NCBI RefSeq assembly: GCF_021028975.2
Contig: NC_059427.1
Location: forward strand, 72,416,001 to 72,480,000
Direction of reading: 5' to 3'
Origin: Sphaerodactylus townsendi
Taxonomy: Eukaryota
DNA: 64,000 bases
The notes under the pieces were generated by a model, which was given only the letters and a program-made list of their open reading frames with translations, ran no database searches and was not told where the DNA came from. Every line of letters begins with the position of its first letter. The first letter of the stretch is position 1. A program made the translations under genes and the position numbers. This document shows, in pieces, positions 5,983 to 64,000 of this stretch.

Positions 5983-15555
<9,573 letters not shown>

Positions 15556-22707: not shown

Positions 22708-22729
22708 CGCACCGCGCCTTCGTACACCC

Positions 22730-22960
22730 TCAAGCCACGTAATTGCTAGAGCAAAAGGCTTGCCCTCGCCGAGAGAAACTACAAAGCCCAGCAGCCCTCT
22801 GAACGGAAATGACGCAGACAACAGGAAGCGGGACGGCTCAAACAGAGGCAGGACCGCGTGATAGGTGTAGGAGCCGGAGCGTGAAAGCAGAGGGCAAGTG
22901 CAGGTACGCCGCGCCAGCCCCGTCTGCAGTGCATTACGCCCGCTTCCAACCAAACTGCCA
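22730..22960 (-). promoter_or_regulatory. TMED9 CpG-island promoter
   Basis: CpG-rich. Contains AACTACAAAGCCCAGCAGCC (ZNF143/THAP11 SBS-like, 22777-22796), CGGAAATGACG (ETS-CRE-like, about 22804-22814) and GCCACGT (22734-22740). Confidence 0.6.
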
Positions 22961-23309
22961 ATCAAGCTTCACTATCCTCTGGAGCAGCTGCTGTCTGGTA
23001 TTAGAAATTATTATGATTCTGCACGAGTTAGTATTTCCCTTGTTTATTTTTAAACCCTTCATGTATAAGTACGAAGTATAGGAAATGAAAAACCCCGCGG
23101 CTACAAGAGGATTATCGGTAGTGTAGTGGATTTTGTGATTCCTCCGTTTCTAGCGCAGGTTTGTGATTCCTCCGTTTCTTGGGCAGCTTTGCCTGCAAAT
23201 AAAGTGCAGTAGGAGCTACAAAGCTTTCACATGACAGATGTCCCTACCCCAGTCCCAAGAGTGCCCATCCCCGGGTGACTGGCTTTTTTTGGTAGACTGT
23301 AATTTTGTA

Positions 23310-38200: not shown

Positions 38201-41078
38201 AGGTACTTCTTCCAGTAGTTCCGGATGGCCCGTTGTCCCCCTATGTCCCAAACACTGAGCTTGAAACCATGAGAGTGGACATTCTTAATGTTGAACCCCT
38301 GTGAAGGCAAAATGGGAAAAGATAAGCAGCAAGACATGACAGTCAGTGAGTCTGTCTAAGACACCAACTGTCTAAGACCTGAATGAGTATAATAATGGCT
38401 TGATAGCCTTCTGTGGTTGGGAAAGCTACTTCTGGTAAAGGCAATTTAGGGATCCCCCAGAATTACAGCAGATTTACAGACTACAGTGATCAGCTGCCCT
38501 GAAGAAAATGGATTTTTGGAGTGTGGACACAATGGCATGGTAGCCCACTGAGATCTCTGTCTTCCTCTGGCTCCATCTCCAAATCTCCAGTAATTTCCCA
38601 ATCTAGATCTGGCAACCCTACATTTACAAGGCTTGTAAATTGCTTGTGCCCTATTCCCCCAGGTGCCAAAGGGTACCTGGAAAACCTAAGGCAGGGGTGT
38701 CCAACTCTCGTGCCCCAGATGTTCATGGACCATGATTCCCATCAGCCCCTGCCAGCATGGCCAATTGTAGTCCATGAACGTCTGGGGTGCCAGAGTTGGA
38801 CACCCGTGCCCTAAGGCATTCAAAGCGAAGAAGAATATATGAAGGCATTGTCTCCTCTGATTGGGGCAGCTTGTGCCAACTGCAGCTTGAGAAATTCCTG
38901 AAACTTTGAAAGTAATGTCTGGAGGCACAGAGTTTGGCCAGGAAGTTCAGCAGCGATGGGATGCCATAGAATCCACCCTCTGAAGGTGGCATTTCTTCCA
39001 AGGGAATTGATCTCTATAGTCAGGAGGTCAGCTGTAATTCTGGGAGAACTCCAGGCCAGTAGCATAGTGCCAACGGGGCTGGGAGGGGGGGGCATGCATG
39101 ATGCCCCGGGCAGAGCAGCAGTGGAGGGGGTGTTGCAAGGCATTTTGGGGGCATTCCGGGGCAGGGCGGGTGTGCCACAGCAGGGGCACAGGTGGAGGCG
39201 CGCCCCAGGTGCAGTTTCCCCTTGCTCCATCTCTGCTCCAGGCCCTGCCTTCAGGTTGGCAGTCCTGGCTGCTTCTTTGTTTCCAGTCATCCTTATCAGA
39301 AATACATTGTTTGGATCTAAAATGATAATCAAAGAACTGTTTATAGGTGCATGCATATCATCCGTAGTCTGGACATTTGAGCACTCAGGAACAAANNNNN
39401 NNNNNNNNNNNNNNNNNNNNNNNNNNNNNNNNNNNNNNNNNNNNNNNNNNNNNNNNNNNNNNNNNNNNNNNNNNNNNNNNNNNNNNNNNNNNNNNNNNNN
39501 NNNNNNNNNNNNNNNNNNNNNNNNNNNNNNNNNNNNNNNNNNNCACAAGATCCATCAAGTCCAACACCCTGCCATGCAGGAAGACACAACCAAACCCCTG
39601 CTGACAGATGGTCATCCAGGCCTCCATTTAAAAACCGCCAAAGTAGTTTTTAAAACACAACACTGTTCCACTTCCTCATTGCAACTTAGAGAAAACTAGC
39701 ATATAAATTGTAATATGGGTCTAAAGATGCTTGAGAATTCAGATGAGAATTTTTAAATAAATTATATGATTTTTTTTAAAAAAATCAGTCTTTCCAGCTT
39801 TCCTGTCTAAATGCCTGAGCTACAGATCTATCATTACCAAACCTTAGAGCCACTACAGCATAGGGGTAGGGGTTGGTGGGCTGGGAATATAATGGCTAAG
39901 GCAGAATACTCTAACATTTTTGAGCCTGCAGGCACATTTGGAATTCTGACGTGACATGGTCGGTGCAGCAACAAAATGGCTCAACCTTGTGCTGTGATGG
40001 CAGCTCCTGTGAAAGCAACATTAAAAAAATTTGCACAGCCAAACAATTCTCCAATAATCAACCAGAAGTCTGATGGGCAAAAGCCCTACCTGGCTTCACC
40101 CAGCTCCTAAAAATACTTGGCAGGTACCACAAAAGGTGTCAGTGGGCACCATGGTGACCATGGGCAGAATGCTGAGGACACTTGAGTGTTTTTGCTGGCA
40201 TATTGTTTGGGGAGTGTTTCAGTTCTACTTGTTGGAGATGGGCATAGTGTAACTGCTGTAGCAAGGGTGGTGGTTTGGATCCTCCTGCTCACAAACCAGC
40301 TTCTTTAAGTCTCTATGTAATTAATTACCCAAGAGCTAAATGTCCCATCCCACCCCCTCAAGGGAGATCCTCTCTGCTGCAGTGCTTACCTGTGTGGGGG
40401 TGATGGTGTCCACCTCTTCAGATGCCAGACACTTCAGCAATGTGGTCTTGCCAGCATTGTCCAGCCCCAGTAGAACAATCCGCAAGTTTTGCTCTTCGGA
40501 GCCTTTAAGCTTTTGGATGACTGACAGAAGCCCCTGGGGTGTGAAGAAAGTGTTCATGGATAGGGCCCTGTATCCATGCCAAGAAAAAAGCAAGAGGGCA
40601 AGGATTCTATGGAAGCGCAATGGGGTGCTCCTGGGTTTGCTGTATGGATGGGGTCATACTAGAGGGTCAAGCTGGCCTTTTAGAACCTTCTTCTGAACTG
40701 TCATTTGATTCCAAAGACCTCAGAGTTGACCCTGAGCTCCTAGGCCATAGCAAAATACATACAATTTTAGCTCTACTTTTGTGACTACGTTGTTCTGACC
40801 CATATATATATTTGCTCTACTCACAATTGTACCAACCTGCCTCACCAGCCCCAGGGTTCCTTTCTATTACTTTTGGTTGTATATTACAGATTACCCCATA
40901 ATGCCAACAGGACATGTCTCTGAAACAGAGGACATAAATTTGTTCCAAGGAACAAGTTGGCTGCAAGCATCAGCGGCTAACTAGCCACACTGAGCCACAC
41001 TGTAAAAAAGGCTCTTTGCTATCCCATGCTATTTGCTGCAGATCTGAAGAACCTACTTACCTTCTTTGCTTCACCCAT
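35275..41078 (-). CDS. ADP-ribosylation factor-like 3-like small GTPase (ARL3 paralogue), 187 aa
   Basis: complement(join(35275-35322,36384-36569,37794-37844,38182-38298,40390-40533,41061-41078)), 564 nt, all phase-0 GT-AG introns as in ARL3. Starts MGEAKK|[10 protein letters not shown] and has [31 protein letters not shown] and DGMNW. It is clearly diverged from canonical ARL3. Confidence 0.93.
35427..36338 (+). mobile_element. Two tandem ~450-bp solo-LTR-like units (35427-35883, 35891-36338)
   Basis: Unit 1 has TGTAGT...ACTACA termini and both units have an internal AATAAA. CTTTGA flanks both ends (35421-35426, 36339-36344) and CTTTTGA lies between the units. CpG-rich. Confidence 0.65.
36990..37520 (-). 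mobile_element. Degenerate L2-like LINE fragment
   Basis: Contains ATAATCCAACCTGGATGTGACC and other segments resembling L2 ORF2 C-terminal sequence on the minus strand. Heavily decayed. Confidence 0.35.
38692..38808. mobile_element. hAT-type MITE (related to 27439-27577)
   Basis: TIR CAGGGGTGTCCAACTCT...AGAGTTGGACACCCGTG with an 8-bp TSD ACCTAAGG/CCCTAAGG (7 of 8 match). Confidence 0.75.
39396..39543. other. Assembly gap (148 N)
   Basis: Run of N within ARL3-like intron 2. Confidence 0.99.
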
Positions 41079-47120: not shown

Positions 47121-48697
47121 CAGGGATACTTTGGAGGCAAGCATAGTAATATTTGAAAGAGTCATAAACAATTTCCAAACTATAGTTACCACAGTCACAT
47201 ACTCTGTAGCTTTCAGCTGCAAACATTTCAGACATTCCATATCTCAGGGAAAGGTGTTGTTATAACATGCCTACATCTTTCATGTGCATGTAGGTCTGGT
47301 TCTTCAGAGCTATTCTGTTCAGCCCGCCCCCCCCCCCCCGCCCCGACAGTTACAAAGCAATTCTTTGGATGACATCCTGAACTTCTGGTGAACAGACTGT
47401 TTCCCTCTTCATTAGAAACCCTACAGCGAAATATTTAATGTCTGGTGATCAGAATATATGGTTTCATGCTTTCCAAGTAGTTTGAGGGCAGCATTAAAGG
47501 ATCAATTTCCTTTTGAAAGAAATTGGCAAAGACTTGAAGAGTTATATCTAATACTGTTTATTTGCAGTTATACAATTGGACACACAGCATCTGAGGCAGA
47601 ATAACATCAGTACAAAACCAAGAGCACTTGCCCAGGTAATTTTTCTGCCAGCCAATTCCAGATTTTTTTTCTCTTCCTTTGCCAGAGGAAATGTATTTAT
47701 TAATTATTAAAATATTTATATTCCACCTTTTTTCTTGGTTCAGTGAGTCATACATGCAATAATGAACAAATTACAAGTTAAAACCAAATACTCCGGTTTT
47801 AACTTGTAACCAAATTACAAGTTAAAACCTCAGATACTCCTCTCCCTCCTCAATAAATGTCTGCTGCTCCTTTCCCAGAAATCTTGACAAAGAAGAAAGC
47901 TTTGCATCACTGTTTAAAGATGCAATCAGTGGGTTCCCCATACTTCTTCAGGGAGCCCATTCCATGGATTAGGAACTGTAAAGAAAAGGTCTGGGCTGTG
48001 GTCGATGCCAGGAGACCACTCTGAGTGTGGTCCTTTCTTCCATTGGGTCTTCTCTTTCCAGCTTTCATTTCACATACATTACTGGAGATTTGGAAGTGGT
48101 GCCTGGGAAGGGTGCAGTTGTCGGTTGGGTAAGGATGTGATGCCACAGAGTCCACCCTCCAAAACTGCCATTTTCTCCAGGACAACTGATCTCTATCGAT
48201 AGACATCAGTTGTAATTCTGAGACAATGACAGACGCCATCTATAGGTTGGCAACTCTAACCTGCTAGTTTCTTCAGGGAGGCACCTGGCAGCATACTCTG
48301 GCCACTCATAGGCTGAATAAACAAGCAGCAGAAACACTTGCTGAAACTATTCAGTATGTATAAATTGTTCTCGCTCCAAAGTTTGGATTTTCATAAAATA
48401 TAGCTTTCAGAAAAAGGAAGGAGAGGCAGATGGACAGGGGCTAGTAGCTATGCAGAAGCATCAAAGTAAAGAAGCCACACTTTTGAAAGCATCACAGCAA
48501 ACAAACCACACCATTGACCACTGGAAAGGACACTGAAATATCTGGACACCCAGATATTTCTTAGTTTCTGAACATTTTGCACAGACTGCTCATATATTTT
48601 TGAGCTTTCTGGTGTAGTAACAAAGTGGGCACTTCCAACGACCAGGTGTGCTAATATGCAGCATGAGAATATGTCACCAGCTGATGAAGGTGATTGG

Positions 48698-51600
48698 CTA
48701 GTCCCCCTGATGATAGGCCTTCCACATGCACACTGTGCCATCCAGTGAGACTGACACATACTGCAGAGAAACAGAGAGGTGATAAAATCAAGGGTCTAGG
48801 CATATAGTTTCTTTCAAAGACTGGATGCATTCATGCAACACACTGGGAATGCTCCCACCAGCCATGGAAAGTTCTTGGGCACATTCTTGGTTTCCTAGGG
48901 TATATTTTTAAAGAAAAAAGCATGAACCAGCTGTAGCAGCTTAGATACAGACTAGGGTGGGCAACAGAAATGTTTCCTCCCCAGAAGGCCACAACTGACA
49001 ACCAACCCAGAAAACAGAAAATGATCAGTTAAGTGTGACCCATGTCTGCATTATCACCTTGGTTGTGAAAGGACTGGAGTGGCAGCATGAAAAAATATCT
49101 CTGTTTATACTGGAATAGTTTGGTGTAGGATGATCTTGTGCCAGTGCAACTATACTCAGTAAAGTGGGCATGACCTCACTTTGCAATGAAATACCAACTT
49201 GCACCCAGCCCTCTGATGGGGGAGGGGACTGATAGATACAGACTGAGCACACCACTTGGCCTGAATGTGGTCAGGGCAACTACTTTTAAACAGTCCTCTG
49301 TGCTAATAATGATAAAACTCCCAACCTCATATTCACTGATCTTTTTCCATACAGGGTGGTGCCACTGTCCCTTTTACCTGTTCCATTTCTGGGACATGGA
49401 TGAGGCCCTTGATGGAGTCTTGATGCCCTGTGTGACTTTGTACTTGCACCCCAGACTTAGTGTCATAAACCCTGCAAAAGAAAGAGCACAGAGCCATAAA
49501 CCCGTACACAGATCTCCTGTCCTCTCAACCTCCCTTCCCCAGTTGAATTGTTTACCTGATGGTGTCATGGACCCCTGCAACAATGCAGCCATTGACCTGA
49601 TCAATGCCAAGGCAGGTGATGCCTCTGGGGGTTCTCAGCTCCTTCATGCAGCATCCTCCATCTTCACTCTGTATGCACCATAGACAGAACTTCTATCATC
49701 CATACCACTAGCAAGCAATACTTTCTAGTCAGTTCCGAGCAAGGACCTTTGTAACAATCTGTTCCAGACATTGTTTTTCTAACTGTTCTGTGACAGACCT
49801 ACTTACTACACCTCAGATTCAGCCAAATATGGTCAGGAATTCATCCCAGTTTATCAGTGGTTGAGGAAAAATTATTTTCTTACTTCCCAGACAGCTTAGC
49901 AGTATCTATTACACTTTTATACTGCCTTTCTTCCAAGATGCTCAGAGTAGCATAAATGTAAATTCCTTTCTTCATTTTATCCTGTCAAATAGGTTAAGCT
50001 AACAGAGAATGGCCCAAAGAGCATCATGGCTGAGAGGCAGTTGGAAACCAGGTCTTTGCAATCCTGGCCCAACTCTCTACTCCACACACATACTCAGCAT
50101 ATGAAAAATGTGATGAAGCCTCTATTTGATGAAGCCCTTACCCAGAGTCGAATGCAGCCATCTTCAGAACCGCTGACCCACTTGTCCTCTAATGGATGCC
50201 AGACCAAGGCTACAACACTAACTTGGTGCCCAAGTTCAGCCAGGAGTATCAGATTGGCACAGTAAGGATTGAAAGCACAGATAAAAATTCTGCCAGTGCT
50301 AGAAGACAAAGCAAATTCTCTCCTGATAGGGTCAGGAGAGTGTGGATTGTGGATGTAAGAATGGTAATGGAGGCGAAAAGTCCTAAGCCCAAACCCAACA
50401 ATAGAGGTTTTTGAGCTTGATATTACCCCTGAGCCAAGAGGCAGATTTTGTTATATTCTCACTAGGGGCCTTCAAAGGATAAAACTACAGCTCATGAGCA
50501 CTCTGCAGCTGTGCCACGTCAGAGGCAGAAAGACTCACCCACCTCTTTGGGGAGTAGGCCATGTCAAGGATGGGCCCACTGTTCCCAGGTATGCTAGAAA
50601 ACTCATGTTGCAAGGAGCGGTTCTGCAGATCCCAGAGACACAGCTTTCCATCCCATCCCCCACTGAGCTACAATGAAAAGCAACAAGGTGAGGCTGCCTT
50701 TCAGCATTGCCTTCCCTCCCCAAAGCTGTTTATCTTGCCCACCCACATCCTCTGTCCACAACATGGATTATGAAGGCTGTCCCTGTGCGTGGGGCCTTCA
50801 ATTTGCACTCTCCCGTCTATTACTTCTGCCCAAGGACAGAAATGGAATTGTCTCCTGGCATCCCTAAAAATTTGTCCTCTTGTTCACTTACAAGGTAGGG
50901 GGAGCAAATGGTGCTGTCACTGTCTACCAACGTGAGTGCTGTTACCATGCCTGTATGCCCACACAGCACAGTTCTACAGGCAAAACCTATTCAGAGAAAA
51001 ATTGTCAAGTGAGGTAGTCATGGGATAGGGGAGGCAGCAAAGCTCTTTAAGTAGCCAGTAAAGTCCCCTGGATAGAGCTGAGGTGACTTTACCCCTGCAA
51101 AAGTATCCTTAGCCAACCCAGTCAAACCACTTTGTTCACCTGCTACACACTCTCTTGAAGACTCCTGAGCCATCTCATCTTGGGCACAGGCTGGTGCTGC
51201 TCCAGAATCTTGACCCTGTAAAGACATCATCATTACAGCATGCAAGGGGGGGGACCACAAACACTTAAGGGAGTCGCTTAAATCTTCTTCTGCAAGGCAT
51301 CTTTGAGCACTAGGTTCTTAAGACAAATCTATCCTACAAATATAAATGCTTAACTCTGACTCACATCCCAAGAACCCTGAGAATTATCAGCACCCTCATA
51401 AAACTACTGCATCCCGGAGAAATACCTTTGAGAACAGTCATGACAATTTAACAGTTGATACCTGCTACATACCCTGAAGGTATGACTGGACACCAAATAG
51501 GTGATAAAGTGCTGGCAACACTGACAGACAATTACAAATTCAGCCGTGATGACTTTGGTCAAAATTAAGTTGCAATTAAAAAGACCTTAATGAAGAATTT

Positions 51601-54600
51601 CATACAACATAACAAATGCCTCACTAGGCTAAGCTTCAACTATTAAACTAAAGATAACATGCAGAAAAACAACCTGCATGCAGAAAAATATGCCTGCGTA
51701 TAACCTGTTTTTCTATTCAACATAATGCAATTCAATTTAGTCTGTAATACAATCTGTAATCCATCAAGACTCTAGTCTAGAAGCTCTATACTGGGGATTT
51801 CCACCATGCGCTGAACATCTTTTTCTCCCACCCTGTTGAAGTTTTGTGGGGACCTCAAAAGCTTCCACACAGTTTTGTGACCTTTTGTTTGACCTAAATA
51901 CCAAAGCATTACATGACTTCTGATGTTGCCTTTCCTCCTTATCATTCAAGATTGTCCCAGGTTACTAATGGTGGAAGAGAGAATGAAGTTTCCCAAGCAC
52001 GGACCTTTGCTAGGAATGGACTAGCCTACCATGCCACACCATAGCTCAGTGTCTGCTGGTACTTTCTTAAATCCTTCAATTAAATGCATGTGAATGGCTG
52101 GCATATACTTCCTGTCAGTAACTGCCACTCTCTCCCTGCAGATGACCTACAAGGAGAAAACATTTGCCTTCCTCCTTCCAATCACTGGAATTTTTTAGGG
52201 TAAAATTTTGTTCTCACCTGACTAGGTGAGTTGAAGCTCTCAAACTCCCAGAGGTAAATGTTTCCATTATTTGCTGACACCATCAGAATGTCCAGCTCCT
52301 CAGCAAAAATGGCCCTGCCAAAGGTCCAGGGTTTTATTATTGTGGCAGCATCCTACTCAAATGCTCATCCATAATTTCTTTGACCAAAAATAGGCCAGAG
52401 AGACATTGGTGCAAATTAAGAATTACATTTTATTTATTTATTTATTTTATTTTTTAGTTTTATATCCTGCCCGGCCTTTCCCAATAGGGCTCAGTACAAG
52501 TAAAATTTTATAGTTCAAGTAAAAAATTCTTGCTGAAAGACTAGCAGATCCCCCTGAGAAAGCGTTGCGTAGATAATTGTTTACTTGTACAGTAAAATAT
52601 CATGCTTCAACTGCACCAATGGCTCTTCAGCCTTTTTTTTTTTGCTGTGATTGATGGAGCCCTTCTGGTTTCTGTTCACACTAACTTGATGACAAAACAC
52701 CACTTTAATCTCTCCTGCATATGCTGGGCAGTTCTGAGGCTGCAACTGCTAGATCCATCCAGCGTGTTCTCTCATTCCTTTTGGCAAGAATCATCTTCCG
52801 AATGCCAAGTCCAGTCCTATCTATCAATTAAGCACAATTGTAGCCTCCCCCTTCCTATATGGAGCTCAGGGTAGCATATATGGCTCTCCTCCATTTTATC
52901 CTCACAGCCCTGTGAGGTACTTTAGGCTAAGTAGCTGGCCCAAGATTGCCCAGGAACCTTCACGGCTAAGGGGGGATTTGAACTTGGTTTCTCCAGGTCT
53001 TCCACTCTAACCACTATACCACACTGACCCTCCTACATGCATGGCCTAGCATATGAGACTATTATCTCTTCTTACTGTCTCTTTGAAAATCCGTTAGCTA
53101 AATGCAAGAGGAAATAAATAAACCAATTGGTGAAAATGGCCTGGCTGACCTCCTGCTGCAACTCATATTCCCGGAGAGTACCCATTTGTATTTACCTCGT
53201 GAAGCCTATGCCTTCTTTTTGTGTGTCCTTGGCTGTTGTCCGGAATGCGCTATAGCCACTCTGGTGACCACTATAGGCCTTTCCCCATTTTCGAGAGGAA
53301 CACAGGTGGGGTTGTGGCTCTTCCTTACAGCTCTTCACCGTCTGCTGTGCAAAGGGGCCTCGTCGCTCCAAATGCGCCTCACTGATGTGGAAGGACTCCA
53401 TGCTAAATGAAAGGTAATGAATGGGGAGGGCTAGGCTGGTGATAGATTACTGCGGAGAGGATGGAGCAGGGCATTGATTGGCCATAGGTGAGAGGACTGT
53501 GAGCTTCCAAAGGCTTGAAATAGGATGGTTATATAACAACAGGGGAAGTAGCAGGGGGCAGGTGGAAGGAAGTCTTGGTGGCATGGCAAGGGGTGATAGT
53601 GGAAGGCAACAAGGAGGAAGAGGAGAGTAGTAAAGGTGAAGAGGAAAGCAAGTCTTATTTGACAGCTGACTTTTGGATAGTTCTACTGAACAGGTCAGCA
53701 CAGAGGCAGATGGTGGGAAAGAAAAACCTTTTAGAGATCCTAGTGAGAGCTGAAAAGGGAGATTCCACTCCTATCATGGCACTCCTAACGTTCTGTCTCT
53801 TGCAGGGCCAAAGATCCTAAGCTAAAGGCAGGACCATAAGAACATAAGAACTAGCCTGCTGGATCAGACCAGAGTCCATCTAGTCCAGCACTCTGCTACT
53901 TGCAGTGGCCCACCAGGTGCCTTTGGGAGCTCACGTGCAGGATGTGAAAGCAATGGCCTTCTGCTGCTGCTGCTGCTCCTGAGCACCTGGTCTGCTAAGG
54001 CATTTGCAATCTCAGATCAAGGAGGATCAAGATTGGGAGCCATAGATCGACTTCTCCTCCATAAATCTGTCCAAGCCCTTTTTAAAGCTATCCAGGTTAG
54101 TGGCCATCACCACCTCCTGTGGCAGCATATTCCAAACACCAATCACACATTGTGTGAAGAAGTGTTTCCTTTTATTAGTCCTAATTCTTCCCCCCAGCAT
54201 TTTCAATGTATGGCCCCTGGTTCTAGTATTGTGAGAAAGAGAGAAAAATTTCTCTCTGTCAATATTTTCTACCCCATGCATAATTTTATAGACTTCAATC
54301 ATATCCCCCCTCAGACGCCTCCTCTCCAAACTAAAGAGTCCCAAATGCTGCAGCCTCTCCGCATAAGGAAGGTGCTCCAATAATCAATTGTAAATTAATC
54401 AATGTAAATTAGAAAGCAGCATTAGTTAACTTTCCCCACTAGTCTTCAAACTAGCACACACCCTTTATCTAGGCACCAAATTGGTTAGACCTGCTTTCAC
54501 TTCCCAGACTGTTCTAAACATAGAAGCAGGGGTATAATGTGGGTGGGGCAAGCCAGGGCTCTTGCCCTGGGTGCCAGTTGCCTGGGATGCACTGGCTGTG

Positions 54601-57600
54601 GGGCCCCCCGCCCCCCGCTGCTACAGCCAAAATTCCTTTAACTTGACTTGATTGCTTTTAACTTAGTTCCAGGCAAGTGGCTTGGAAGAGACTGGGAGCA
54701 GGGGCGAGGCCAGGGAACGGCTCCCTTCCTAGCCTTGTCCCTATCCCCAATTTCATCCTGGCCACTTGCCTGGAACTAAGTTAAACATAATTAAATTTAA
54801 AGCAAACTCTTTAGGCTTCTTTGGCAGTGGTGGTGGGGCTGTGGGGGAGAGAAATGTGGGCCAGTTCCTCCCCCCGCCCCGCCCCGCCCCGCCCCACCAC
54901 CACCACCACCAGCACCACCACAGAATAAGAAGCCCAAAGAATTTGCTTTAAGCTTAATTATGTTTAACTTAGTTTCCTGGCTTTGTTCTCATTCCCAGGC
55001 TCCTCCCAGGCTCCCACCCCCACCCCCACTTTGCAAAATCAGGATCCAGCTTTGCAAAGGGGTGTGTGCCTATGGAGATACTGGGGGAAAGCCGACAGGA
55101 GCTGAGGTGACTTCGGTTCGGAATACAGAGTCCATGGGGATGCAGACAGAGAAGGAGGTTTTTTTAAATCAACCACACTTACAGAAGTTAGAAAAGAGCA
55201 CAACAATGTGATAGAGGTGATAGATGTCTACAAAAGGCTAGAGGGCAAAACACATAAATCCCAGGTTAGGGACAGAGACAGAGTATACAAGTGTCTCTAT
55301 GCTAATAGTAGAAGCATTCGACCTAAAATGGGGGAGCTGGAGTACAGAGTTTTGAAGGAGGACATTGATACTTAAGTGGGCATCCCACAGGAGACATGAG
55401 GTGGGGTGAGAGGAGAACCAGTGGGATGCTGTTATCCCAGGTTACAGGCTCTACAGGAAGGAAAGGATAGGACAAGAGTATTGGGGGGGGTGGAGTGGCC
55501 CTCTACATCAAAGAGAGCATAGTGTCACATAAAATAGACAATGCAGGTGGAGCTGAGGATTCCCCTACAGAGAAGCACTGTGGATATCAATACCAGAGGG
55601 GTGAAGCATGGTTTAACATTAGGAATATATTATAGTCCCCTGACCAAAGTAGCACAGAGGATTCTGAGATGGAAAAAAAGAAATTAGAGAGGCCAACAAA
55701 AGCAAAAATGTATGTAAATTAGTAATATTTTGATTTTAACTATCCTTATATAAACTGGAAAAATGCATGTTCAGGTCATAGTAAGGAGAGAACATTCCTG
55801 GATATGCCTTCTAAATGACTGTGGCTTAAGAGCAGATGGTTGTACAGAACCAACCAGGGGAGATGTGATCCCTAGATCTAATTCTATATGTAGGGACCCC
55901 AGGACCTGAGATGGGGAAGTCAGTGTTGTTGAGCCCGATAGGGAACAGCGACCACAATGCTGTCAGATTCCAGTATCTCTGCATGTTGAGACAAGTGACA
56001 ACTACTAATGTAGTTACATTTGCCTTCAGAAAGGAAATTTCTCAAAAGAGATGAGAGGGATAGTCTGCTTGAGGAAGCTGAAAGGAGAAAATCAAAGAGA
56101 GAGTCAAAAAATGTCCAAGATGCTTGGAGGTTATTTAAGAACACACAGTCACAAAAAAGCTCAGCTGGGAGAATGTGTTCCACTTGAGTTAGGAAAGGCA
56201 GCCCAGTCCAAGAAAAGCCACCATGGTTAACAAAAGGGGCGTTGAGGAATTATTAGGAAAAAAAAAGATGTCTTTTAGAAAATGGGAAGTCCAACTTAAC
56301 TGATAAGGAATACCAGAGAACACACAATGGTGGCAAAGAGAAGCAAGTTAGCTGTAGCCAAGGGCAGGCAAAAAGTTATGAGGAACACATGGCTGTGAAC
56401 ATCAAAACCAGCAACAAACAGTTCTTCAAAGTACATCAAAAGCAGGAAGCCAGCAAAGGGAGGCGGTAGGCCCGTTAGATGACAAAGGAACAAAGGGTGT
56501 GCTAAAAAAGAGATGACAGAGGAGATTGCAGAAAAGCTGAATGAATTCTTTTGCATCTGTCTTCTTCACCCAAAGGAGAGGAGGTGAGAAAATTCCTGCA
56601 CCTGAGACCAGAAGCTTCTTAGGAAGTAGAAGATCCGAGGGAACTAACAAAGATAGTGGTAGACAAAGGGAAGAAGTTCTGGCAGCCATTGATAAACTAA
56701 ATGTTACCAAATCCCCTGGCCCAGATTGCATTCACCCAAAGAGTTCTTAAAGAGCTCAAGCTTGTAAGTGCTGATCTTCTCACTTTAATATGCAACTTAT
56801 CCTTGAAATCAGGCTCCATCCCTGAAGACTGGAAGATGGCCAATGTCACACCAATCTTTTAAAAAGAAAGGATCTAGGGGGGGGACGAGGGAAATTACAG
56901 GCCAGTCAGTTTTGACATCTGTTCCTGGTAAATTAGTAGAATCTGTCATTAAAGATAAAATTATAAAACATGTAGAAAAGCAGAGACCTGCTGAGAAAAG
57001 TCAGCATGGCTTTTGCAGAAATCCTGTCTTACAAACTTACTAGAGTTCTTTGAGGGATGTAAACAGGCATGTGGATAAGGGGAACCAGTGGACATTGTCT
57101 ACTTGGATTTCCAAAAGGCTTTTGACAAAGTTCCTCACCAGAGACTATTGAGAAAACTCAGCAATGAAGGAATAAGAGGGAAGTCCTCCTATGGATTACC
57201 TCCTATGGATTAAAAACTGGTTGAGAAACAGGAAGCAAGAGTGGGTGTAAATGGGAAATTCTCACAATGGAGAGATGTAAGGAGTGGTGTCCCCAAGGGA
57301 TCCGTGTGGGACCAGTGCTCTTTAACCTATTCATAAATGACCTGGAAGTAGGTGGGTAAGCGTGGTGGCCAAGTTTGCAGATGATACCAAATTATGTAGG
57401 GTGGTGAGAACCACAAAGGATTCTTGAGGAGCTCCAAAGGACCTTGATAAATTAGGTGAGTGGGCTCAGAAATGGCAAATGCAGTTCAATGTAGCAAAAT
57501 GCAAAGTGATGCACATAGGGGCAAAAAATCCAAACTTCACATACATGCTACAGGGGTCAGTGCTATCAGTCACAGACCAGGAAAGGGATTTGGGCGTCTT

Positions 57601-60600
57601 AGTTGATAGTTCCATGGGAATGTCAACTCAATTTATGGCAGCTGTGAAAAAGGCAAACTCTATGCTGGGGATAATTAGGAAAGGAATTGAGAATAAAACT
57701 GCAAAGATTGTCATGCCCTTATATATAAAGCTGTGGATGCGACATACTTGGAGTACTGTGTTCAGTTCACAATTAGCCACATCTCAAAAAGGATATTGAA
57801 GAGATAGAAAAAAAGTGCAGAGAAGAGCGAGGATGATTGAGGGACTGGAGCACCTTCCTTATGAGGAAAGGCTGCAGCGATTGGAACTCTTTAGTTTGGA
57901 GAGGAGGCGTCTGAGGGGGGGATATGATTGAAGTCTATAAAATTATGCATGGGGTAGAAAATGTTGACAGAGAGAAATTTTTCTCTCTTTTCTCTGTCAC
58001 TAGAACCAGGGGCATTCATTGAGAAAATGCTGGGGGAAAAATTAGAACTAATAAAGGAAACACTTCTTCATAGCGTGTGATTGGTGTTTGGAATATGCTG
58101 CCACAGGAGGTGGTGATGGCCACTAACCTGGATAGCTTTAAAAGGGGCTTGGACAGATTTATGGAGGAGAAGTCGATTTATGGCTACCAATCTTGATCCT
58201 CTTTGATCTGAGATTGCAAATGCCTTAACAGTCCAGGTGCTCGGGAGCAACAGCCACAGAAGGCCATTGCTTTCACATCCTACATGTGAACTCCCAAAGG
58301 CACCTGGTGGGCCACTGCGAGTAGCAGAGAGCTGGACTAGATGGACTCTGGTCTGATCCAGCTGGCTTGTTCTTATGTTCTTATGTTCTTATGAGATGGG
58401 AACAACTCTCCTGATTTTTACAGGCACCCTGCTGGATCCCCCCTCCCTTGGCCCTGGCAAAGCTGCAGTGTTGGGGTGCGGGAGGGGGCAATTTCAGTGT
58501 TTGCCCTGAGGACCATTTCCTGTAAATAACGCCCCTGGACAGAAGGAACCATCTTTAGTAGATAAGATGTAGGAAGAGATCTGTGTAATTTCACATGCAG
58601 ATAAAAGATACTTGTACAGCAAATTGACATGCCTCTCTTTGCAGTCATTGTGAGAGATTGGCAGCTCTTTTTGGACTGTGGACAGAATAGATAAAAAATT
58701 ACCTGTAGATCAAAGGTGATATGTAGCTCCTCTCCCATTTCTGCAGTATCCCCCTGCTGTCTCCACTGAAGAGCAGAACAGGCTCCTTTTTAGCTAGAGG
58801 AGATACATTCAGAAGGTCAACCAAGTGATACCGCCCAGGAAAATAGCCAAAATATTTTCCTGAGTCAAGTTACCTGACTACACTGGCTCCAAGTCAAGAC
58901 GCAGAGACCAGTGTAGCCCATTTTATTGATGTTCCCAAATAGGTTTTGTCCCCTGATCTGCTCTGTTAAATATGTATTATGCTTCTTGTATTAGGTTTAG
59001 TATGCCCTGCTTAAGTTTAGCCTTGGTTAAGTCAAGTAAAATGTCATTTTAGGTAAACTGTATTGGAAAAATGTAATGGCTTAGAATGGTGAATATTAGA
59101 GGCACAAGGAAGTTGTGGAATTCAGTTCGAGCCAACACCCAGCCGACTTTCCAGCTGAAACAAAGACCCTCTTTGGTTTTGCAAATCGAGTTGATGATAG
59201 CGCCCAGAGGTCCCAGCTGTTGGAGAACGTGTCGGGATCGTCATTGGACTGTTTAAACTCTCTTCTGTTACGGGACTGAGGCGCGGGAGCCTCAGGTCAT
59301 AACTCAAGTAAACAGCCATCTGATAAAGCAGATAACTGGGTGCGGTAGCAAGCCCACCCAGATTCTCTGAATGGACCTTCTCCGCTCTCCTTTCAGCACC
59401 ATTGCAAGATCTCACGGGAAGACGCTTGACAGTGGGATTTCGTGATCCCATTCACAAAAGTTGAAATTGTATCTGTCTTTTGTATTGATGTTTCTTTATT
59501 GGTGTTCGGTAGGGGACCTGCCCCCTACCTGCCCCCTTCACCTGCCCCTTTGCCCTCTTTGATGTTTTGTGTATAAAAGTTCTTGCGCTTGGCTACGAGA
59601 GCGCGATTCTCCTGCCCGAGCTGTCACCACCACTTCCAAATAAAATACTTTGCCTTGAAGAAACACCGGCTCCCTGAGCCTCAATACGTTGCTGAGCTGG
59701 AATAACTTATTGTTACCTGAGAAACAGCAGTAACACAAGGGCTTGGAGAAACTCATCAAAGAGATTATTCCGCGATTCACAAAGTGCAGACTTGGCTCTG
59801 GTCAGCAGCTGGCACGGCCCTGCCAAATAAGCTTCTCCTGGCTTTCAGCTACTGCAGACGTACCCCTCAACTGATGGAGCTTATTATATTTCCCTGACCC
59901 ATCCAGGGATGATGCGGGGCTGACGCAGCTTGTGATATCCTTGGCCCCCTTACCATAAGCAAGGCACTCTGAGGCGTGTTTGCAAGGCAGCACCGTCAGG
60001 CATCCCAACTCACTGTACCTCCAGACCAGAGTTTGCTGGGGTTTTGCAGAACCTAAAAGAAGGTAAACATCTTATTGTTCAGCAGAACACAGAATTTAAA
60101 TCAGAATTTTAGATTAGCATGGGGGTTTTAAGGTCTTTTGTTTGTTTTTCCTTGAAACAAGATTAGTGGCTTTTGTTTGGGTTACTAAAGACTGTGGGAA
60201 AGAAGGCAGCATGGTATAGCTTGATCTTGTCCCATCTTGGAAGCTAAGCAATGAAGGAAGACCATCAAGAGTTTTGACCTGGACTGTGGTGCATGGGGAA
60301 GTAAGTCTTCTTCCCCTCATGACAATTTCCTGACTTGAAATACTCCCAGGAAGTCACTATGTAATCTTTTTGGAAAACATGCATGGGCTGTAAGGTCTCC
60401 CTCCACAAACCCTGGGAGCTGTTGAGGATAGACACATCACTGATGCTGTCGCTCACCCTTCTCTATGAATTTCCCGAAACTCTATAGTAAATACCCTGTC
60501 CCTGAAATTTTCTTCTGCTCACCGTACTGAGTGCAGGCAACAGAGGCAGGAATTCATCTACTGTGGGAGGGTATATGGCAACGTTATGCATATAGCCCAA

Positions 60601-62363
60601 GGGTCAGCAACGTTTAACAACCAAAGAGCCATTTAGACCCATTTTCCACGGAAAAGAAAACACTTGGAGCCGCAAATACTTTTTGACATCTAAAATGAAG
60701 ATAACACTGTATATTCTCATGCAGGGAGAAGTTCCCTTCTTTGGGGCCCATTTTTACCCATCAAAGCAAAAGGAGGGGTGTGTGTGTAAAAAGCCTGTTG
60801 TTTTGTACATGATTCAAATGACCAGCAATAGAACCCCCATTTCACACATTTCTCTTTTCTTGTGTTGAAAAACACTGATTATGCCCCCTTCCAAAAGAAC
60901 CCCCTCAAATTCCACTTGGATGGTGGATCAAAATTGGTGCCTTTAATGGGGCTGTCAACTTCTGGGGGGGCTGAACTTCTCCCCCCCCCCCCGAGAAAAT
61001 GTCTGCCATGGAGGGTGGACTCAACAGCCATATTCCTCACTGAACATGGCCTCCGCCCTGGTCCCAAAAGCCACAGTTTCTGAGAATCTACCTCCAAATG
61101 TCCGGGGATTTACCTGCCAGGAGTTGGCAACCTGTGACAACCATGGCTGAGGATGATCCTGGCCTTCCTCCCTTCCACGATCTACAAGTTTACCCTCCAC
61201 TGGCTTACTCTGAAGTAAACCTTCCAAGATCCACGTGCAAGGCTTTCCCCATGCGCTTCTGCCCTCCTTGGCAATGCAGAAGCAAACACTTCCCACCCAC
61301 CCCGCCTCCCCATCAAACAGCCCCAATGAGTGCAACCTTGCAGGGCTGCAAGTAATAACTCCTTTAAAACCTGACATCGTCTTTCTCACCTGGACTCAGC
61401 CAGGCTGCCATCCGTCAGGAAAGCCCCTGGAGCTCAGCGGGGCTGCTGGGGGATCTGCAACCCAAGGTGGTGCTACTGGGGTCCCCCATGTGGTCCCGCC
61501 CCTCAAGAAGGACTTGGGGAGGGGAAAATGAGGCCACCCAAAGCAGGGTCGACCCCTGATCCCCCATCCAAGGGTGGCAGACTGAGGTTAGCATTGCGCT
61601 GAAAATCTGTGGTCCTGCAACTCCCTCCTATTTCCTGCTCTTCGCCGCTCACCTATTCAAGAGGATCCACCAGCAATGCTCTGCCCCCCCCCCCCCGCGC
61701 CGTCATCACCGGCATCAGCCAACCAGGCAGCTGGGCAGGGAAGCTGAAAGTGGCTTGGGATAGCCGCCTTGGGCTGTGCCTCTCTAGGAATGGGGACTCT
61801 TTCCCATTAACCCTTAGGGCTACTCTCCGAAGGACGCTGAGAGGACCCAAGCCACCCGGAGCCGCACTACAAGGACGAAAGAGCCGCATACGACACTGGA
61901 GCTGTAGGTTGCAGACCCCTGATATAGCCCATCAATACATGTAGTTTCTCCAATAGGGTAAATAGTACATTCCAAGGACTATCTCTGATAGGGAAAATGG
62001 TGTGCGGGGAAGGCTTAAGCACCCTTTCCCCACCTTCTGTAGCCTCAGTCTTAATCAGCCAATTTATCTTTTCCCATGCATCCCTTTTGTACCAGTCTTT
62101 CTCACTGAGCTCTTATGACCTCCACGCTACACACAAAGACATGGCCTACCAATAAGAAAGGATGGTGAATTCACTTTCAGAATCCACACACTAGGCTAGG
62201 GACTAGGAGGAGGCCAAGGAGGGTCTTGTACTGCAGATGCCAAGGGAGGCATCCTTCTGAGATACTCACCAATGACATGCCTTGAGTCTGGCAGGCTGAA
62301 AAGCTGCTGAAGAACAAGCCCTTCCATCTGCTGGCCTCGAAATGTAGATATGAATTGTGAAAC
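48698..62363 (-). CDS. Uncharacterised WD40-repeat protein, 12 exons / 444 codons recovered, 5'-incomplete
   Basis: complement(join(48698-48760,49378-49471,49556-49668,50142-50322,50543-50667,50892-50986,51140-51215,52218-52314,53196-53402,58703-58793,59954-60052,62270-62363)), 1335 nt with no internal stop, all GT-AG and phase-matched. WD blades include [50 protein letters not shown] and [24 protein letters not shown]. Confidence 0.88.
52855..53030 (-). mobile_element. tRNA-derived squamate SINE
   Basis: Minus-strand GTGTGGTATAGTGGTTAGAG head, B-box GTTCAAATCC and core CCTCACAGGG. Confidence 0.6.
53835..54379 (-). mobile_element. Young CR1 LINE, 3' end (5'-truncated)
   Basis: ORF 54027-54380 ([46 protein letters not shown]) plus a 3' UTR and (TTCTTATG)n tail. 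Confidence 0.92.
55080..58393 (+). mobile_element. CR1 LINE with nearly complete but frameshifted ORF2 (APE endonuclease + RT)
   Basis: [16 protein letters not shown] (about 55283), [22 protein letters not shown], GVPx[10 protein letters not shown] (57371-57394), [14 protein letters not shown] and a 3' (TTCTTATG)3 tail. Same family as 53835-54379. Confidence 0.93.
58965..59690 (+). mobile_element. Probable solo ERV-type LTR in an intron of the WD40 gene
   Basis: CpG-rich block with TATAAAA (59572-59578) followed by AATAAA (59639-59644), a U3-R-U5-like layout. TGTATT...AATAC ends are plausible but no TSD was resolved. Confidence 0.5.
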
Positions 62364-64000
62364 CTGAAAACAGGTCAATACAGAGAATCTAAAGCTTTAG
62401 CATCTCTTGCTCTCTATTTCTGTCTTACACTGTGGAATGGTCCACAAGAGCCATCTTTACTTGGGAGTCAGGCAAAGTCATAATGGAAAGAGGAACCAAT
62501 CCAGTCTGCTCTGCCTCCTATAGTACATGACAGAACTCTTGATAGAGCTGTGAATTACTGTTGTCATAGTAGGTTCACAGCAATGTTAAATCACAGAAAA
62601 TTCAGCAGTGGTTCGCTTCTGAAGTGCTAATCATGCAAAAGTGAGGAAATTCCATCTATGTATATAAAAATCAAACCGTGAGTTTGTTCCTGATGGTCTA
62701 GCACAGGAACTGCTGGGCCAATTCCTCTGAAAATTTCCAGCCACTGCAGTCAGCCAGGCAAGAGTGTTTGTAGATGTTAACATACCTGAAATTTCATACC
62801 TGGCCCAGGTAAAACACCTTTTCCTGGCACTCCATGGTGAAGGACATGAAGCTGCCTGTGTTTAACTGTCAGCCTTAGAATGGGTGGCATGCAAGGGACG
62901 GGAGGGAGGGGCCAGCCAGCCTACATTCCCTGAATACTGCGGTTACAGTTCAGAAAACCAGGCACGCGTTACTTAGGAGTAAGCTCAGTAAAGCAACCAT
63001 GACATACTTTGAATGGCTGCGTCGCGCCCCTCAGAGGGTTTACTCAGAAGTGACACCCATTGCCACCAACCAAACTTACTCCCAGGTAAAGGATCATGAC
63101 CAGCCAGCCTAGATGTGTGGGAGGGGTGCCTTTCCATTACCCCCCAAGGAATGCGGTCATACACATCAATGACATCGCACAGTATCAGGCTGCGCGTTTC
63201 CATGAGCACGTACTGCTGGCCTCTGCAATTGATTTGCTGCTACTGTTCCTTTCCCATTTCACCACAATAACCCATAGCAATGCGTGGCCGGGTACCACTA
63301 GTTTTGAATATATTTAGGGAGCAACTTGAAAACTAAGAAATATAATATTGAAGCATCCATGCAATAAGAGTTGTAAATTTAGTTGTGCTTAGAATGGGAA
63401 AATACAACTAGGGAGATTATTTGAAAAGACCAAATTAAATCTTTCTTCTGTCTAATACGTGATATTTAAGAGGACTGGAACAATTTTTTAATGTAAAATA
63501 GATGTGTATGGTGTTTTTGTTATGTACGTAATATTATTTATTCATTGGTTTGTTATAACAAAAAGACTTGGCTTTGTAACTTAGGTCATTTTCAGCTGAG
63601 AATAAAGAATTTCTGTGTGGTTAAAGCCAATTTAGAATGGGCACCCTTTAAAGAAAAATCATCCCAGGTAGCAGCTTTCTGCAGGTCACTGATCCTTGAG
63701 CAATCACTTGGTACAAACTATTACATTTTGACAAATTACTAGACTGAGATATTGTACGCTGGTCTTCCCTCAAAGTCAGTTCTGAAACCTCACCTGGTAC
63801 AGAATGCCACAGTTCATCTATTATCAGGAGCGGGAAGAAGAATGCATATACTCCCATCCTGCAGGATGCCCAAAAGTGACTAGGTTCAATTCAAAGTATT
63901 AGCTAGCACACACAGAGCCCTTCATAGCCTCGGAACCTCATATATATAAGACTGCATCTCCTGTTGTGGTCCACCGTGACAGATTTGCACGTTGGATCAT

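What the first reader, a model, noticed from the sequence alone, without database searches (positions are those of the whole stretch)
48698..62363. Hidden 12-exon WD40-repeat gene that I cannot assign to a named gene
Seen: twelve short exons splice by canonical GT-AG rules into one 444-codon open frame ([10 protein letters not shown]...[10 protein letters not shown]). It has at least three canonical GH...WD/WK blades and several degenerate ones, and the frame survives across introns invaded by CR1 and LTR elements. Eleven consecutive phase-matched junctions are very unlikely by chance. Inference: it does not match any human WD40 protein I recognise and may belong to an ancient, poorly characterised family lost in mammals. 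The ORF track shows it only as scattered fragments.
Basis: partly seen in the sequence, partly recalled or inferred. Interest (0 to 1): 0.85.

Follow-up and report, generated by a model that had tools for sequence, protein, structure and literature searches.

The report
Unnamed ancient WD40 gene, gecko copy
The twelve exons are real and form the intact 3' two-thirds of a gecko gene for a double-propeller WD40 protein; its family runs from chytrid fungi to lizards, was not found in mammals, birds or teleosts, and has never been studied, though gene-prediction pipelines already list it in related species.

Summary
Observation confirmed.

They match residues 271-719 of NCBI's "uncharacterized protein LOC132571507 isoform X1" of the gecko Heteronotia binoei at about 82% identity. 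Summed exon by exon, dN/dS is 0.22. The 5' 270 codons lie beyond the window.

Three searches found orthologues in squamates, amphibians, cartilaginous fishes, non-teleost ray-finned fishes, lungfish, tunicates, amphioxus, ambulacrarians, molluscs, other spiralians, cnidarians, a ctenophore and two chytrid fungi. None was mammalian, avian or teleost, and none carries a real name.

An AlphaFold model of the gecko orthologue shows two seven-bladed propellers with two disordered loops. PDB and Pfam give only generic WD40 matches.

An intact ARL3 paralogue lies just downstream on the same strand. The same holds in Heteronotia, Xenopus and gar.

RNA support in this species is faint, with no junction reads.

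Function is unknown. I infer a scaffold, possibly cilium-related.

The scan's note s1-747538 covers the same stretch.

The parts
62270..62363 (-). Exon 1 of the window part (94 nt; [10 protein letters not shown]...RHVI). It corresponds to residues 271-301 of the Heteronotia X1 orthologue. Earlier exons lie beyond the window end.
   Evidence: AG acceptor, GTGAGT donor, phase 0 to 1. tblastn identity 94%. blastn to L001 16268-16361 covers the whole exon.
59954..60052 (-). Exon 2 (99 nt; [12 protein letters not shown]...ECLAY).
   Evidence: AG/GT borders, phase 1 to 1. 81% identity to P0151. L001 23362-23460.
58703..58793 (-). Exon 3 (91 nt; [29 protein letters not shown]).
   Evidence: AG/GT borders, phase 1 to 2. 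83% identity. L001 23722-23812.
53196..53402 (-). Exon 4, a 207-nt frame-neutral cassette ([15 protein letters not shown]...GIGFT). It is present in isoform X1 and skipped in X2 of Heteronotia. It starts with the conserved YS-ES motif and is then largely disordered.
   Evidence: AG/GT borders, phase 2 to 2. 75% identity to P0151 364-434. The family alignment keeps Y364, S365 and E367. pLDDT is below 50 at 388-427. Highest RNA depth of the gene in run X6, about 4.6.
52218..52314 (-). Exon 5 (97 nt; [32 protein letters not shown]).
   Evidence: AG acceptor, GTGAGA donor, phase 2 to 0. tblastn hit. L001 25611-25686.
51140..51215 (-). Exon 6 (76 nt; [25 protein letters not shown]), a fast-evolving disordered linker.
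   Evidence: AG/GT borders, phase 0 to 1. Aligned to P0151 470-497. pLDDT below 50 at 461-495. 0 synonymous and 6 non-synonymous differences.
50892..50986 (-). Exon 7 (95 nt; [31 protein letters not shown]), the GH start of a WD blade.
   Evidence: AG acceptor, GTAAGT donor. tblastn hit. L001 27705-27796.
50543..50667 (-). Exon 8 (125 nt; [14 protein letters not shown]...AYSPK), the WD end of that blade.
   Evidence: AG/GT borders. Partial Pfam WD40 hit, 18.2 bits. 85% identity.
50142..50322 (-). Exon 9 (181 nt; REFALSS...[30 protein letters not shown]), a complete WD40 repeat.
   Evidence: AG acceptor, GTAAGG donor. Pfam WD40 27.5 bits, cut-off 27. This exon was the query that found P0003. 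86% identity.
49556..49668 (-). Exon 10 (113 nt; [37 protein letters not shown]).
   Evidence: AG/GT borders. tblastn hit. RNA reads carry one synonymous and one V-to-A difference here.
49378..49471 (-). Exon 11 (94 nt; [31 protein letters not shown]).
   Evidence: AG/GT borders. tblastn hit. L001 29201-29293.
48698..48760 (-). Exon 12, coding part ([20 protein letters not shown] plus the stop codon at 48700-48698). The 3' UTR continues to lower coordinates.
   Evidence: AG acceptor and in-frame stop. 20 of 20 codons identical in protein to Heteronotia. RNA reads in bin 48600-48796. AATAAA at 47701 and 47562, not verified.
53832..58388 (.). CR1-type LINE debris inside intron 3. There is a sense-oriented 3' end at 53832-54383 and an antisense, frameshifted copy from about 55200 to 58388. 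The two 3' ends form an inverted pair.
   Evidence: Inverted repeats I1-I4, 92-99% complementary. RVT_1 weak hit at 57088-57213 on the plus strand. Read depth of thousands to millions.

Best explanation
**What it is (shown).** The stretch is the 3' 62% (12 exons, 444 codons) of an intact protein-coding gene on the minus strand of a gecko genome. It is the orthologue of NCBI's 'uncharacterized protein LOC132571507' of Heteronotia binoei.

**Structure (shown on the orthologue).** The full-length protein is about 720-760 residues long and folds into two seven-bladed WD40 beta-propellers. The window encodes the last blades of the first propeller, two disordered fast-evolving loops (exon 4, an alternatively spliced cassette, and exon 6), and the whole second propeller.

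**Family (shown).** The family is single-copy and broadly vertically inherited. It is at least as old as the animal-fungal ancestor. It was not found in mammals, birds, turtles, crocodilians or teleosts. No member has a curated name or a published function.

**How it works (inferred).**
- Like other tandem-propeller WD40 proteins, it is a non-enzymatic scaffold that binds partners on its propeller faces.
- The two loops are likely regulatory.
- I lean, at roughly 40%, to a role at cilia, flagella or centrioles. Among fungi only flagellated chytrids were found to have it, and in bony vertebrates it sits head-to-tail with a paralogue of the ciliary GTPase ARL3.
For: **Gene model**
- 12 AG/GT exons in continuous phase, 1335 nt.
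- Collinear match to P0151 residues 271-719 at about 82% identity.
- blastn matches to the Heteronotia locus stop at the exon borders.

**Constraint**
- dN 0.074, dS 0.33, dN/dS 0.22, summed exon by exon.
- RNA reads from a related sample differ at 4 synonymous and 3 non-synonymous exonic sites and keep the frame.

**Family range**
- Searches give the range listed above, including Clydaea and Lobulomyces (chytrids), Bolinopsis, Acropora, Actinia, Macrostomum, Tubulanus, molluscs, echinoderms, Glandiceps, Branchiostoma and Ciona.
- The gene trees roughly follow the species tree.
- The chytrid locus has compact fungal gene spacing.

**Fold**
- AlphaFold2 on alignment A1: pLDDT 81.9, pTM 0.76, about 56 strands, disordered at 388-427 and 461-495.
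- Foldseek hits are tandem-propeller proteins.

**Neighbour**
- All five coding exons after the start codon of an ARL3-like gene lie at 40533-35278 on the same strand; the start codon itself was not located.
- An Arf-family gene lies downstream on the same strand in Heteronotia, Xenopus and gar.
Against: - The first 270 codons and the promoter are outside the window, so the intactness of the whole gene is not shown.
- RNA support in this species is faint. Depth is 0-4.6, no splice joint reached the 3-read threshold, and one run has no reads.
- Absence from mammals, birds and teleosts rests on predicted protein sets and a word-filtered search.
- The scaffold and cilium readings are inference. 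Many fully ciliated lineages lack the gene. The X-box scan was inconclusive. The binding test with the ARL3 paralogue was not run by the tool.
- Zebrafish papers mention arl3l1 and arl3l2. If either is the orthologue of this ARL3 paralogue, the two genes were not lost together in teleosts.
Confidence: 0.85

Rival explanations
1. The WD40 protein and the ARL3 paralogue downstream form one functional unit. The WD40 protein would be a dedicated partner (effector, GAP/GEF cofactor or carrier) of that GTPase, or the two would be made as a read-through fusion, as in the Paroedura X1/X2 models. This is compatible with the best explanation and adds a specific mechanism to it.
For: - Same-strand tandem arrangement in this window, in Heteronotia, in Xenopus laevis and in gar, where an Ig gene lies between the two.
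- NCBI models of Paroedura picta splice exon 11 of the WD40 gene onto the ARL exons (P0152 and P0247).
- The ARL exon is clearly ARL3-type: 84 bits against 51 for ARF1.
That note is not independent evidence.
Against: - The Acipenser 'fusions' also swallow the intervening Ig/TM gene, so they look like merged predictions.
- There is no adjacent Arf gene in amphioxus, and none within 10 kb in Callorhinchus.
- The window gene has its own stop codon in exon 12.
- Conserved neighbourhood alone is weak evidence for binding.
Confidence: 0.15
2. It is a decaying or unprocessed pseudogene whose frame has survived by chance.
For: - RNA depth is very low and no junction reads were seen.
- The squamate stem branch in the gene tree is long, at 0.76.
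- The 5' part was not seen.
Against: - 444 codons are open across 12 exons with all 22 splice dinucleotides canonical.
- dN/dS is 0.22 against a gecko with dS 0.33.
- The last exon is identical in protein.
- The same gene is intact in many squamates.
Confidence: 0.04
3. It is a strongly diverged orthologue of a named mammalian WD-repeat gene, so the family is not really missing from mammals.
For: - The homology search scores only the 8000 candidates that share the most words, so a mammalian relative below about 30% identity could be missed.
- WD40 repeats make orthology hard to see.
Against: - Chytrid and ctenophore orthologues at 33-35% identity were found with E below 1e-200, so a mammalian one of similar divergence should have surfaced.
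- No family-specific Pfam propeller model reaches its cut-off.
- From my own knowledge of the human map, not tested here, no WD-repeat gene lies in the TMED9-RGS14 interval of 5q35.3.
Confidence: 0.05

Closest known systems
NCBI Gnomon models of the same gene in other squamates (Heteronotia binoei LOC132571507 X1/X2; Paroedura picta LOC143832194; Anolis carolinensis LOC103277907; Python bivittatus LOC103050984)
   Same: - Orthologues, with 71-86% protein identity over the window's exons.
- Same exon borders and the same cassette exon 4.
- Same C-terminus ...CMWKAYHQG(D).
- Same downstream ARL3-like neighbour.
   Different: - A different species.
- The window copy lacks 4 plus 1 residues in the disordered loop after exon 5 and in exon 6.
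- None of these models has a name, a paper or an experiment behind it.
Tandem seven-bladed WD40 proteins of the small-subunit processome (WDR3/UTP12, TBL3/UTP13, PWP2)
   Same: - Two consecutive seven-bladed propellers of similar size.
- These are the best eukaryotic Foldseek and PDB-sequence matches.
- They share the general way of working, as a protein-binding scaffold.
   Different: - TM-score is only about 0.35, with 11-14% identity.
- Pfam Beta-prop_WDR3_1st scores 126.5 against a cut-off of 154.
- Those proteins are universal in eukaryotes, whereas this family is patchy.
- It has no C-terminal Utp12/Utp13 helical domain.
CFAP52/FAP52, a double-propeller inner protein of ciliary doublet microtubules
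   Same: - A double WD40 propeller of about 620 residues.
- It appears among the Foldseek hits (6u42, 8snb, 9e78, 9e2g).
- Its phyletic pattern is tied to flagella.
   Different: - There is no specific sequence similarity.
- CFAP52 is kept in mammals.
- The match is no better than to non-ciliary propellers.
Cyanobacterial multi-WD40 proteins (Nostoc alr2800/alr3466; PDB 2ymu), from which the automatic names derive
   Same: Canonical WD40 repeats. 2ymu is the top PDB hit by summed repeat score.
   Different: The likeness is at repeat level only, at 15% identity. The '-like' names come from best-hit naming and do not show kinship.

Membership tests
WD40-repeat beta-propeller superfamily (Pfam PF00400) | At least one repeat reaching the Pfam gathering score. 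| tested here: met
   Exon 9 alone scores 27.5 bits against a cut-off of 27. The orthologue P0003 scores 104.8 bits.
WD40-repeat beta-propeller superfamily (Pfam PF00400) | Four-stranded blades closing into seven-bladed propellers. | tested here: met
   The AlphaFold2 model of orthologue P0151 has about 56 strands in two propellers, with pLDDT 81.9. This was tested on the orthologue, because the joined window protein was deliberately not built.
Unnamed orthogroup (LOC132571507 / LOC103277907 / LOC105946813 / LOC100175309) | Collinear, near full-length similarity far above that to any other WD40 protein. | tested here: met
   All 12 exons match in order at about 82% identity. Family members score 492 bits or more, against about 220 bits for the next proteins.
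Unnamed orthogroup (LOC132571507 / LOC103277907 / LOC105946813 / LOC100175309) | Shared exon borders and a shared genomic neighbourhood. | tested here: met
   blastn to L001 ends at the exon borders for 8 of the 12 exons and within a few bases of them for most of the others. The ARL3-like gene lies downstream on the same strand here and in Heteronotia, Xenopus and gar.
Unnamed orthogroup (LOC132571507 / LOC103277907 / LOC105946813 / LOC100175309) | The invariant N-terminus MAM(Q/E)K... and the first propeller. | not testable with these tools
   Residues 1-270 lie beyond the window end. No trace of the preceding exon was found in 62364-64000.
Named family-specific propellers (WDR3, Prp19, THOC3, CDC20, WDHD1, EML, WDR55, WDR5, WDR41) | Reaching the curated Pfam cut-off of the family-specific model. 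| tested here: not met
   Scores against cut-offs for P0003: 126.5 vs 154, 117.5 vs 320, 96.8 vs 305, 95.1 vs 200, 87.3 vs 109.9, 79.6 vs 90, 67.9 vs 200, 49.2 vs 250, 31.2 vs 50.
Cilium/flagellum-associated gene set (phylogenetic-profile definition) | Present in flagellated lineages and absent from lineages without flagella. | tested here: inconclusive
   Among fungi, only two chytrids were found, and animals with ciliated cells have it. However, it was not found in mammals, birds, teleosts, arthropods or nematodes, all of which have cilia. No plant or protist member was identified.
Cilium/flagellum-associated gene set (phylogenetic-profile definition) | An RFX X-box close to the promoter. 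| tested here: inconclusive
   No X-box lies within 600 nt of the ATG in seven orthologous loci. Scattered matches sit 0.6-8.9 kb upstream, and the transcription starts are unknown.

The most novel reading that the evidence does not exclude
The WD40 double propeller is the dedicated partner of the adjacent ARL3 paralogue. Together they form an accessory ciliary or flagellar trafficking module that is older than animals on the WD40 side. The two genes would have been kept in tandem since the bony-vertebrate ancestor. The WD40 gene was then lost independently in mammals, in the turtle-bird-crocodile line and in teleosts.
Probability: 0.12. Interest if true: 0.65.

Novelty: new member of a known kind. 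Interest (0 to 1): 0.4.

Why it matters
The gene itself is an ordinary, already predicted orthologue. Its family is the notable part.

- It is a well-conserved double-propeller protein: 33-35% identity between a ctenophore or chytrids and a gecko, with an invariant N-terminus.
- It has no name, no paper and no solved structure.
- It is absent from human, mouse, chicken, zebrafish, fly and worm, which is the likely reason nobody has studied it.
- It is present in workable models such as Xenopus, axolotl, Ciona, amphioxus, sea stars and corals.

Two hints give a concrete hypothesis that could be tested in Xenopus multiciliated cells or sperm. Among fungi, only flagellated chytrids keep the gene. 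In bony vertebrates it has stayed in tandem with an ARL3 paralogue.

Tried and rejected
**Rule followed.** The joined (spliced) protein was never built for, or sent to, any search. Exons were searched one by one by reference, and public orthologues (P0003, P0151) stood in for the whole protein.

**Searches that gave nothing specific**
- PDB by exon: exon 9 gave only generic WD40 hits and exon 3 gave none.
- ESM Atlas by features: only generic WD40 clusters.
- Foldseek against PDB: only generic tandem propellers, TM about 0.35.
- Literature: none of six LOC or '-like' identifiers occurs in the library.
- Earlier findings near this place: none at first.

**Rejected exon guess.** My first guess for exon 2 was the open piece at about 60.4 kb (SDSISDV...). 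I dropped it because no acceptor fits the phase and the orthologue uses 60052-59954.

**RNA.** Read laying on 48600-54500 with three RNA runs found no splice joint at the 3-read threshold. Depth was 0-4.6, and faint reads in run X6 fell mostly in exon-bearing bins. This neither shows nor excludes expression.

**Complex prediction.** I submitted Polyodon WD40 plus the sturgeon ARL3-like domain with GTP/Mg. The tool did not fold the pair, for a policy reason. This gives no evidence either way, and I did not try it by another route.

**X-box scan.** The scan covered 10 kb upstream of seven orthologues. There were seven loose matches, none near the ATG, and the transcription starts are unknown. 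Inconclusive.

**LTR elements.** No direct repeat pair was found.

**Assembly gap.** The N run at 39396-39543 was left untouched.


Full report
**Observation**

All exon-like open pieces in 48.7-62.4 kb lie on the minus strand. Guided by an orthologue, I fixed twelve exons: 62363-62270, 60052-59954, 58793-58703, 53402-53196, 52314-52218, 51215-51140, 50986-50892, 50667-50543, 50322-50142, 49668-49556, 49471-49378 and 48760-48698.

A script read each exon in its own phase and checked only the three-letter junction codons.
- All eleven introns are GT..AG.
- Phases are continuous and no stop occurs.
- The lengths sum to 1335 nt, which is 444 codons plus a stop.
- The model begins [10 protein letters not shown] and ends [10 protein letters not shown].

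Pfam finds WD40 in exon 9 (27.5 bits) and partial repeats in exons 8 and 12.

Intron 3 carries CR1-type LINE debris. There is an inverted pair of 3' ends (53832-54379 and 57846-58388, 92-99% complementary), a weak RVT_1 hit and enormous read depth. No LTR-like direct repeat was found.

Exons were searched singly by reference, and public orthologues were used for whole-protein work.

**Identity**

Exon 9 was searched against 1.84 billion representative proteins. Among many multi-repeat bacterial proteins, it found one 650-residue protein matched over the whole exon, P0003. This is XP_060094292.1, 'uncharacterized WD repeat-containing protein alr2800-like isoform X2' of the gecko Heteronotia binoei.

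Its longer isoform X1 (P0151, 719 residues, LOC132571507) aligns to all twelve window exons in order, at residues 271-719 and about 82% identity. The 207-nt exon 4 is the cassette that distinguishes X1 from X2.

Identity is 81-86% to most gecko proteins, with an 'unverified' Gekko kuhli model at 74%, and 71-76% to a lacertid and a python. The first 270 codons are not in the window.

**Is it a working gene?**

I fetched the Heteronotia locus (L001) and compared codons exon by exon, summing the counts.
- Synonymous differences: 74 over 278 sites.
- Non-synonymous differences: 69 over 985 sites.
- dS is 0.33, dN is 0.074 and dN/dS is 0.22.
- The DNA matches stop at or within a few bases of the exon borders, so the exons are conserved islands.
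- Exon 6, a linker, is the only exon with no synonymous but six non-synonymous changes.

RNA evidence in this species is thin. Three RNA runs were laid on 48600-54500 and gave depth 0-4.6 and no joint at the three-read threshold. Run X6 shows reads mainly in the bins that hold exons, most over exon 4. Those reads differ from the window at seven exonic sites, four of them synonymous, and keep the frame.

**The family**

Three searches of the 5.8-billion-protein collection were run: with P0003, with a 23-member alignment, and with an invertebrate-weighted alignment. Cluster look-ups followed. Together they recover orthologues from:
- many squamates, frogs and salamanders;
- sharks, rays and a chimaera;
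- sturgeon, paddlefish, gar, bichir and lungfish;
- tunicates, amphioxus, a hemichordate and echinoderms;
- molluscs, a nemertean and a flatworm;
- corals, an anemone and a jellyfish;
- the ctenophore Bolinopsis;
- two chytrid fungi, Clydaea vesicula and Lobulomyces angularis.

The chytrid gene sits on a contig with compact, fungal-style gene spacing and on a very long branch, so it is not animal contamination.

No mammal, bird, turtle, crocodilian, teleost, arthropod or nematode appears. After the family, the scores drop to about 220 bits for bacterial WD40 proteins. The quick gene trees broadly follow the species tree, with a long squamate stem.

All names are automatic ('uncharacterized', 'alr2800-like', 'HET-E-1-like', 'U3 snoRNP protein 13', 'WDR5B'). 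None of six identifiers occurs in the paper library.

**Structure and likely mechanism**

AlphaFold2 on the alignment gave mean pLDDT 81.9 and pTM 0.76 for P0151. The model has about 56 strands, that is two seven-bladed propellers. Three stretches are disordered: 275-284, 388-427 (inside exon 4) and 461-495 (end of exon 5 plus exon 6).

Exon 4 begins with the nearly invariant YS-ES motif, which forms a strand of a blade. The exon-4-skipped isoform therefore lacks a conserved structural piece.

Foldseek and PDB sequence searches return only generic tandem propellers at TM about 0.35: 2ymu, WDR3, TBL3, PWP2, Apaf-1, Gemin5, AIP1 and FAP52. No family-specific Pfam propeller model reaches its cut-off.

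What is shown is a non-enzymatic double propeller. That it acts as a binding scaffold is inference from the fold.

**Surroundings**

Downstream on the same strand lies an ARL3-type GTPase gene with all five coding exons after the start codon intact (40533-40390, about 38313-38179, 37850-37794, 36572-36384, 35322-35278). Its start codon was not located. This rests. Further on there are B4GALT7-like and, by eye, TMED9-like exons.

An Arf-family gene follows the WD40 gene on the same strand in Heteronotia, Xenopus laevis and gar, with an Ig gene between them in gar. An RGS12/14-like gene lies upstream in gar and Callorhinchus. Amphioxus shows no such neighbours.

Paroedura models splice exon 11 onto the ARL exons. 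The sturgeon 'fusions' look like merged predictions.

This fits a 5q35-like block in which, from my memory of the human map and not tested here, neither gene exists in human. Zebrafish papers mention arl3l1 and arl3l2; orthology to this gene was not tested.

The attempt to test binding was not folded by the tool, and an X-box scan was inconclusive.

**Verdict**

The gene is real, constrained and unnamed, and it belongs to an ancient family not found in mammals.

It is not hidden from databases, so it counts as a new member of a known, though unstudied, kind. The cilium and ARL3 ideas are leads, not findings.

Noticed in passing
window 35278-40533, minus strand: ARL3-type GTPase gene directly downstream of the WD40 gene on the same strand, with all five coding exons after the start codon intact (the start codon was not located). 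It is about 70% identical to mammalian ARL3 in the exon at 36384-36572 and is probably a paralogue of ARL3. The same tandem arrangement occurs in Heteronotia, Xenopus laevis and gar. Paroedura gene models read through from the WD40 gene into it.
   Followed up: partly
window 9333-9665 and 13425-13841 (minus); 22477-22965 (minus): Exons of a galactosyltransferase with Pfam Glyco_transf_7N/7C hits, B4GALT7-like by eye, and a p24/TMED9-like first exon by eye only. They place the window in a block that I recall as syntenic with human 5q35.3.
   Followed up: partly
window 53832-54379 and 57846-58388: Two CR1 3' ends in opposite orientation inside the same 5.3-kb intron, 92-99% complementary over about 550 nt. 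They could pair in the pre-mRNA next to the alternatively spliced exon 4.
   Followed up: no
window 54640-54980: Short palindromes (I5, I6) and a G/C-rich low-complexity run that gives His-, Gly- and Trp-rich reading frames on both strands, inside intron 3.
   Followed up: no
L007 10001-13802 (Clydaea vesicula) and P0307 (Lobulomyces angularis): Chytrid-fungus orthologues of the family, about 1000 residues long. The two proteins are almost identical although they are filed under different genera. A weak SAXO1-2-like gene lies 7 kb away in the Clydaea contig.
   Followed up: partly
gene tree of the family: The squamate stem branch is unusually long (0.76 changes per column), and squamates lack a loop of about 18 residues (alignment A1 columns 676-693) that other vertebrates keep. 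This suggests a burst of change before squamates diversified, although present-day constraint is clear.
   Followed up: no
L005, L006 and L002, about 8.4-8.9 kb upstream of the start codon: RFX X-box-like palindromes at a similar distance upstream of the ATG in Xenopus (one mismatch), paddlefish and gar. In gar the site lies inside the neighbouring RGS gene. Meaning unknown.
   Followed up: partly
window 39396-39543: Run of 148 N in the intron between the first two coding exons of the ARL3-like gene. It was left as it is.
   Followed up: no
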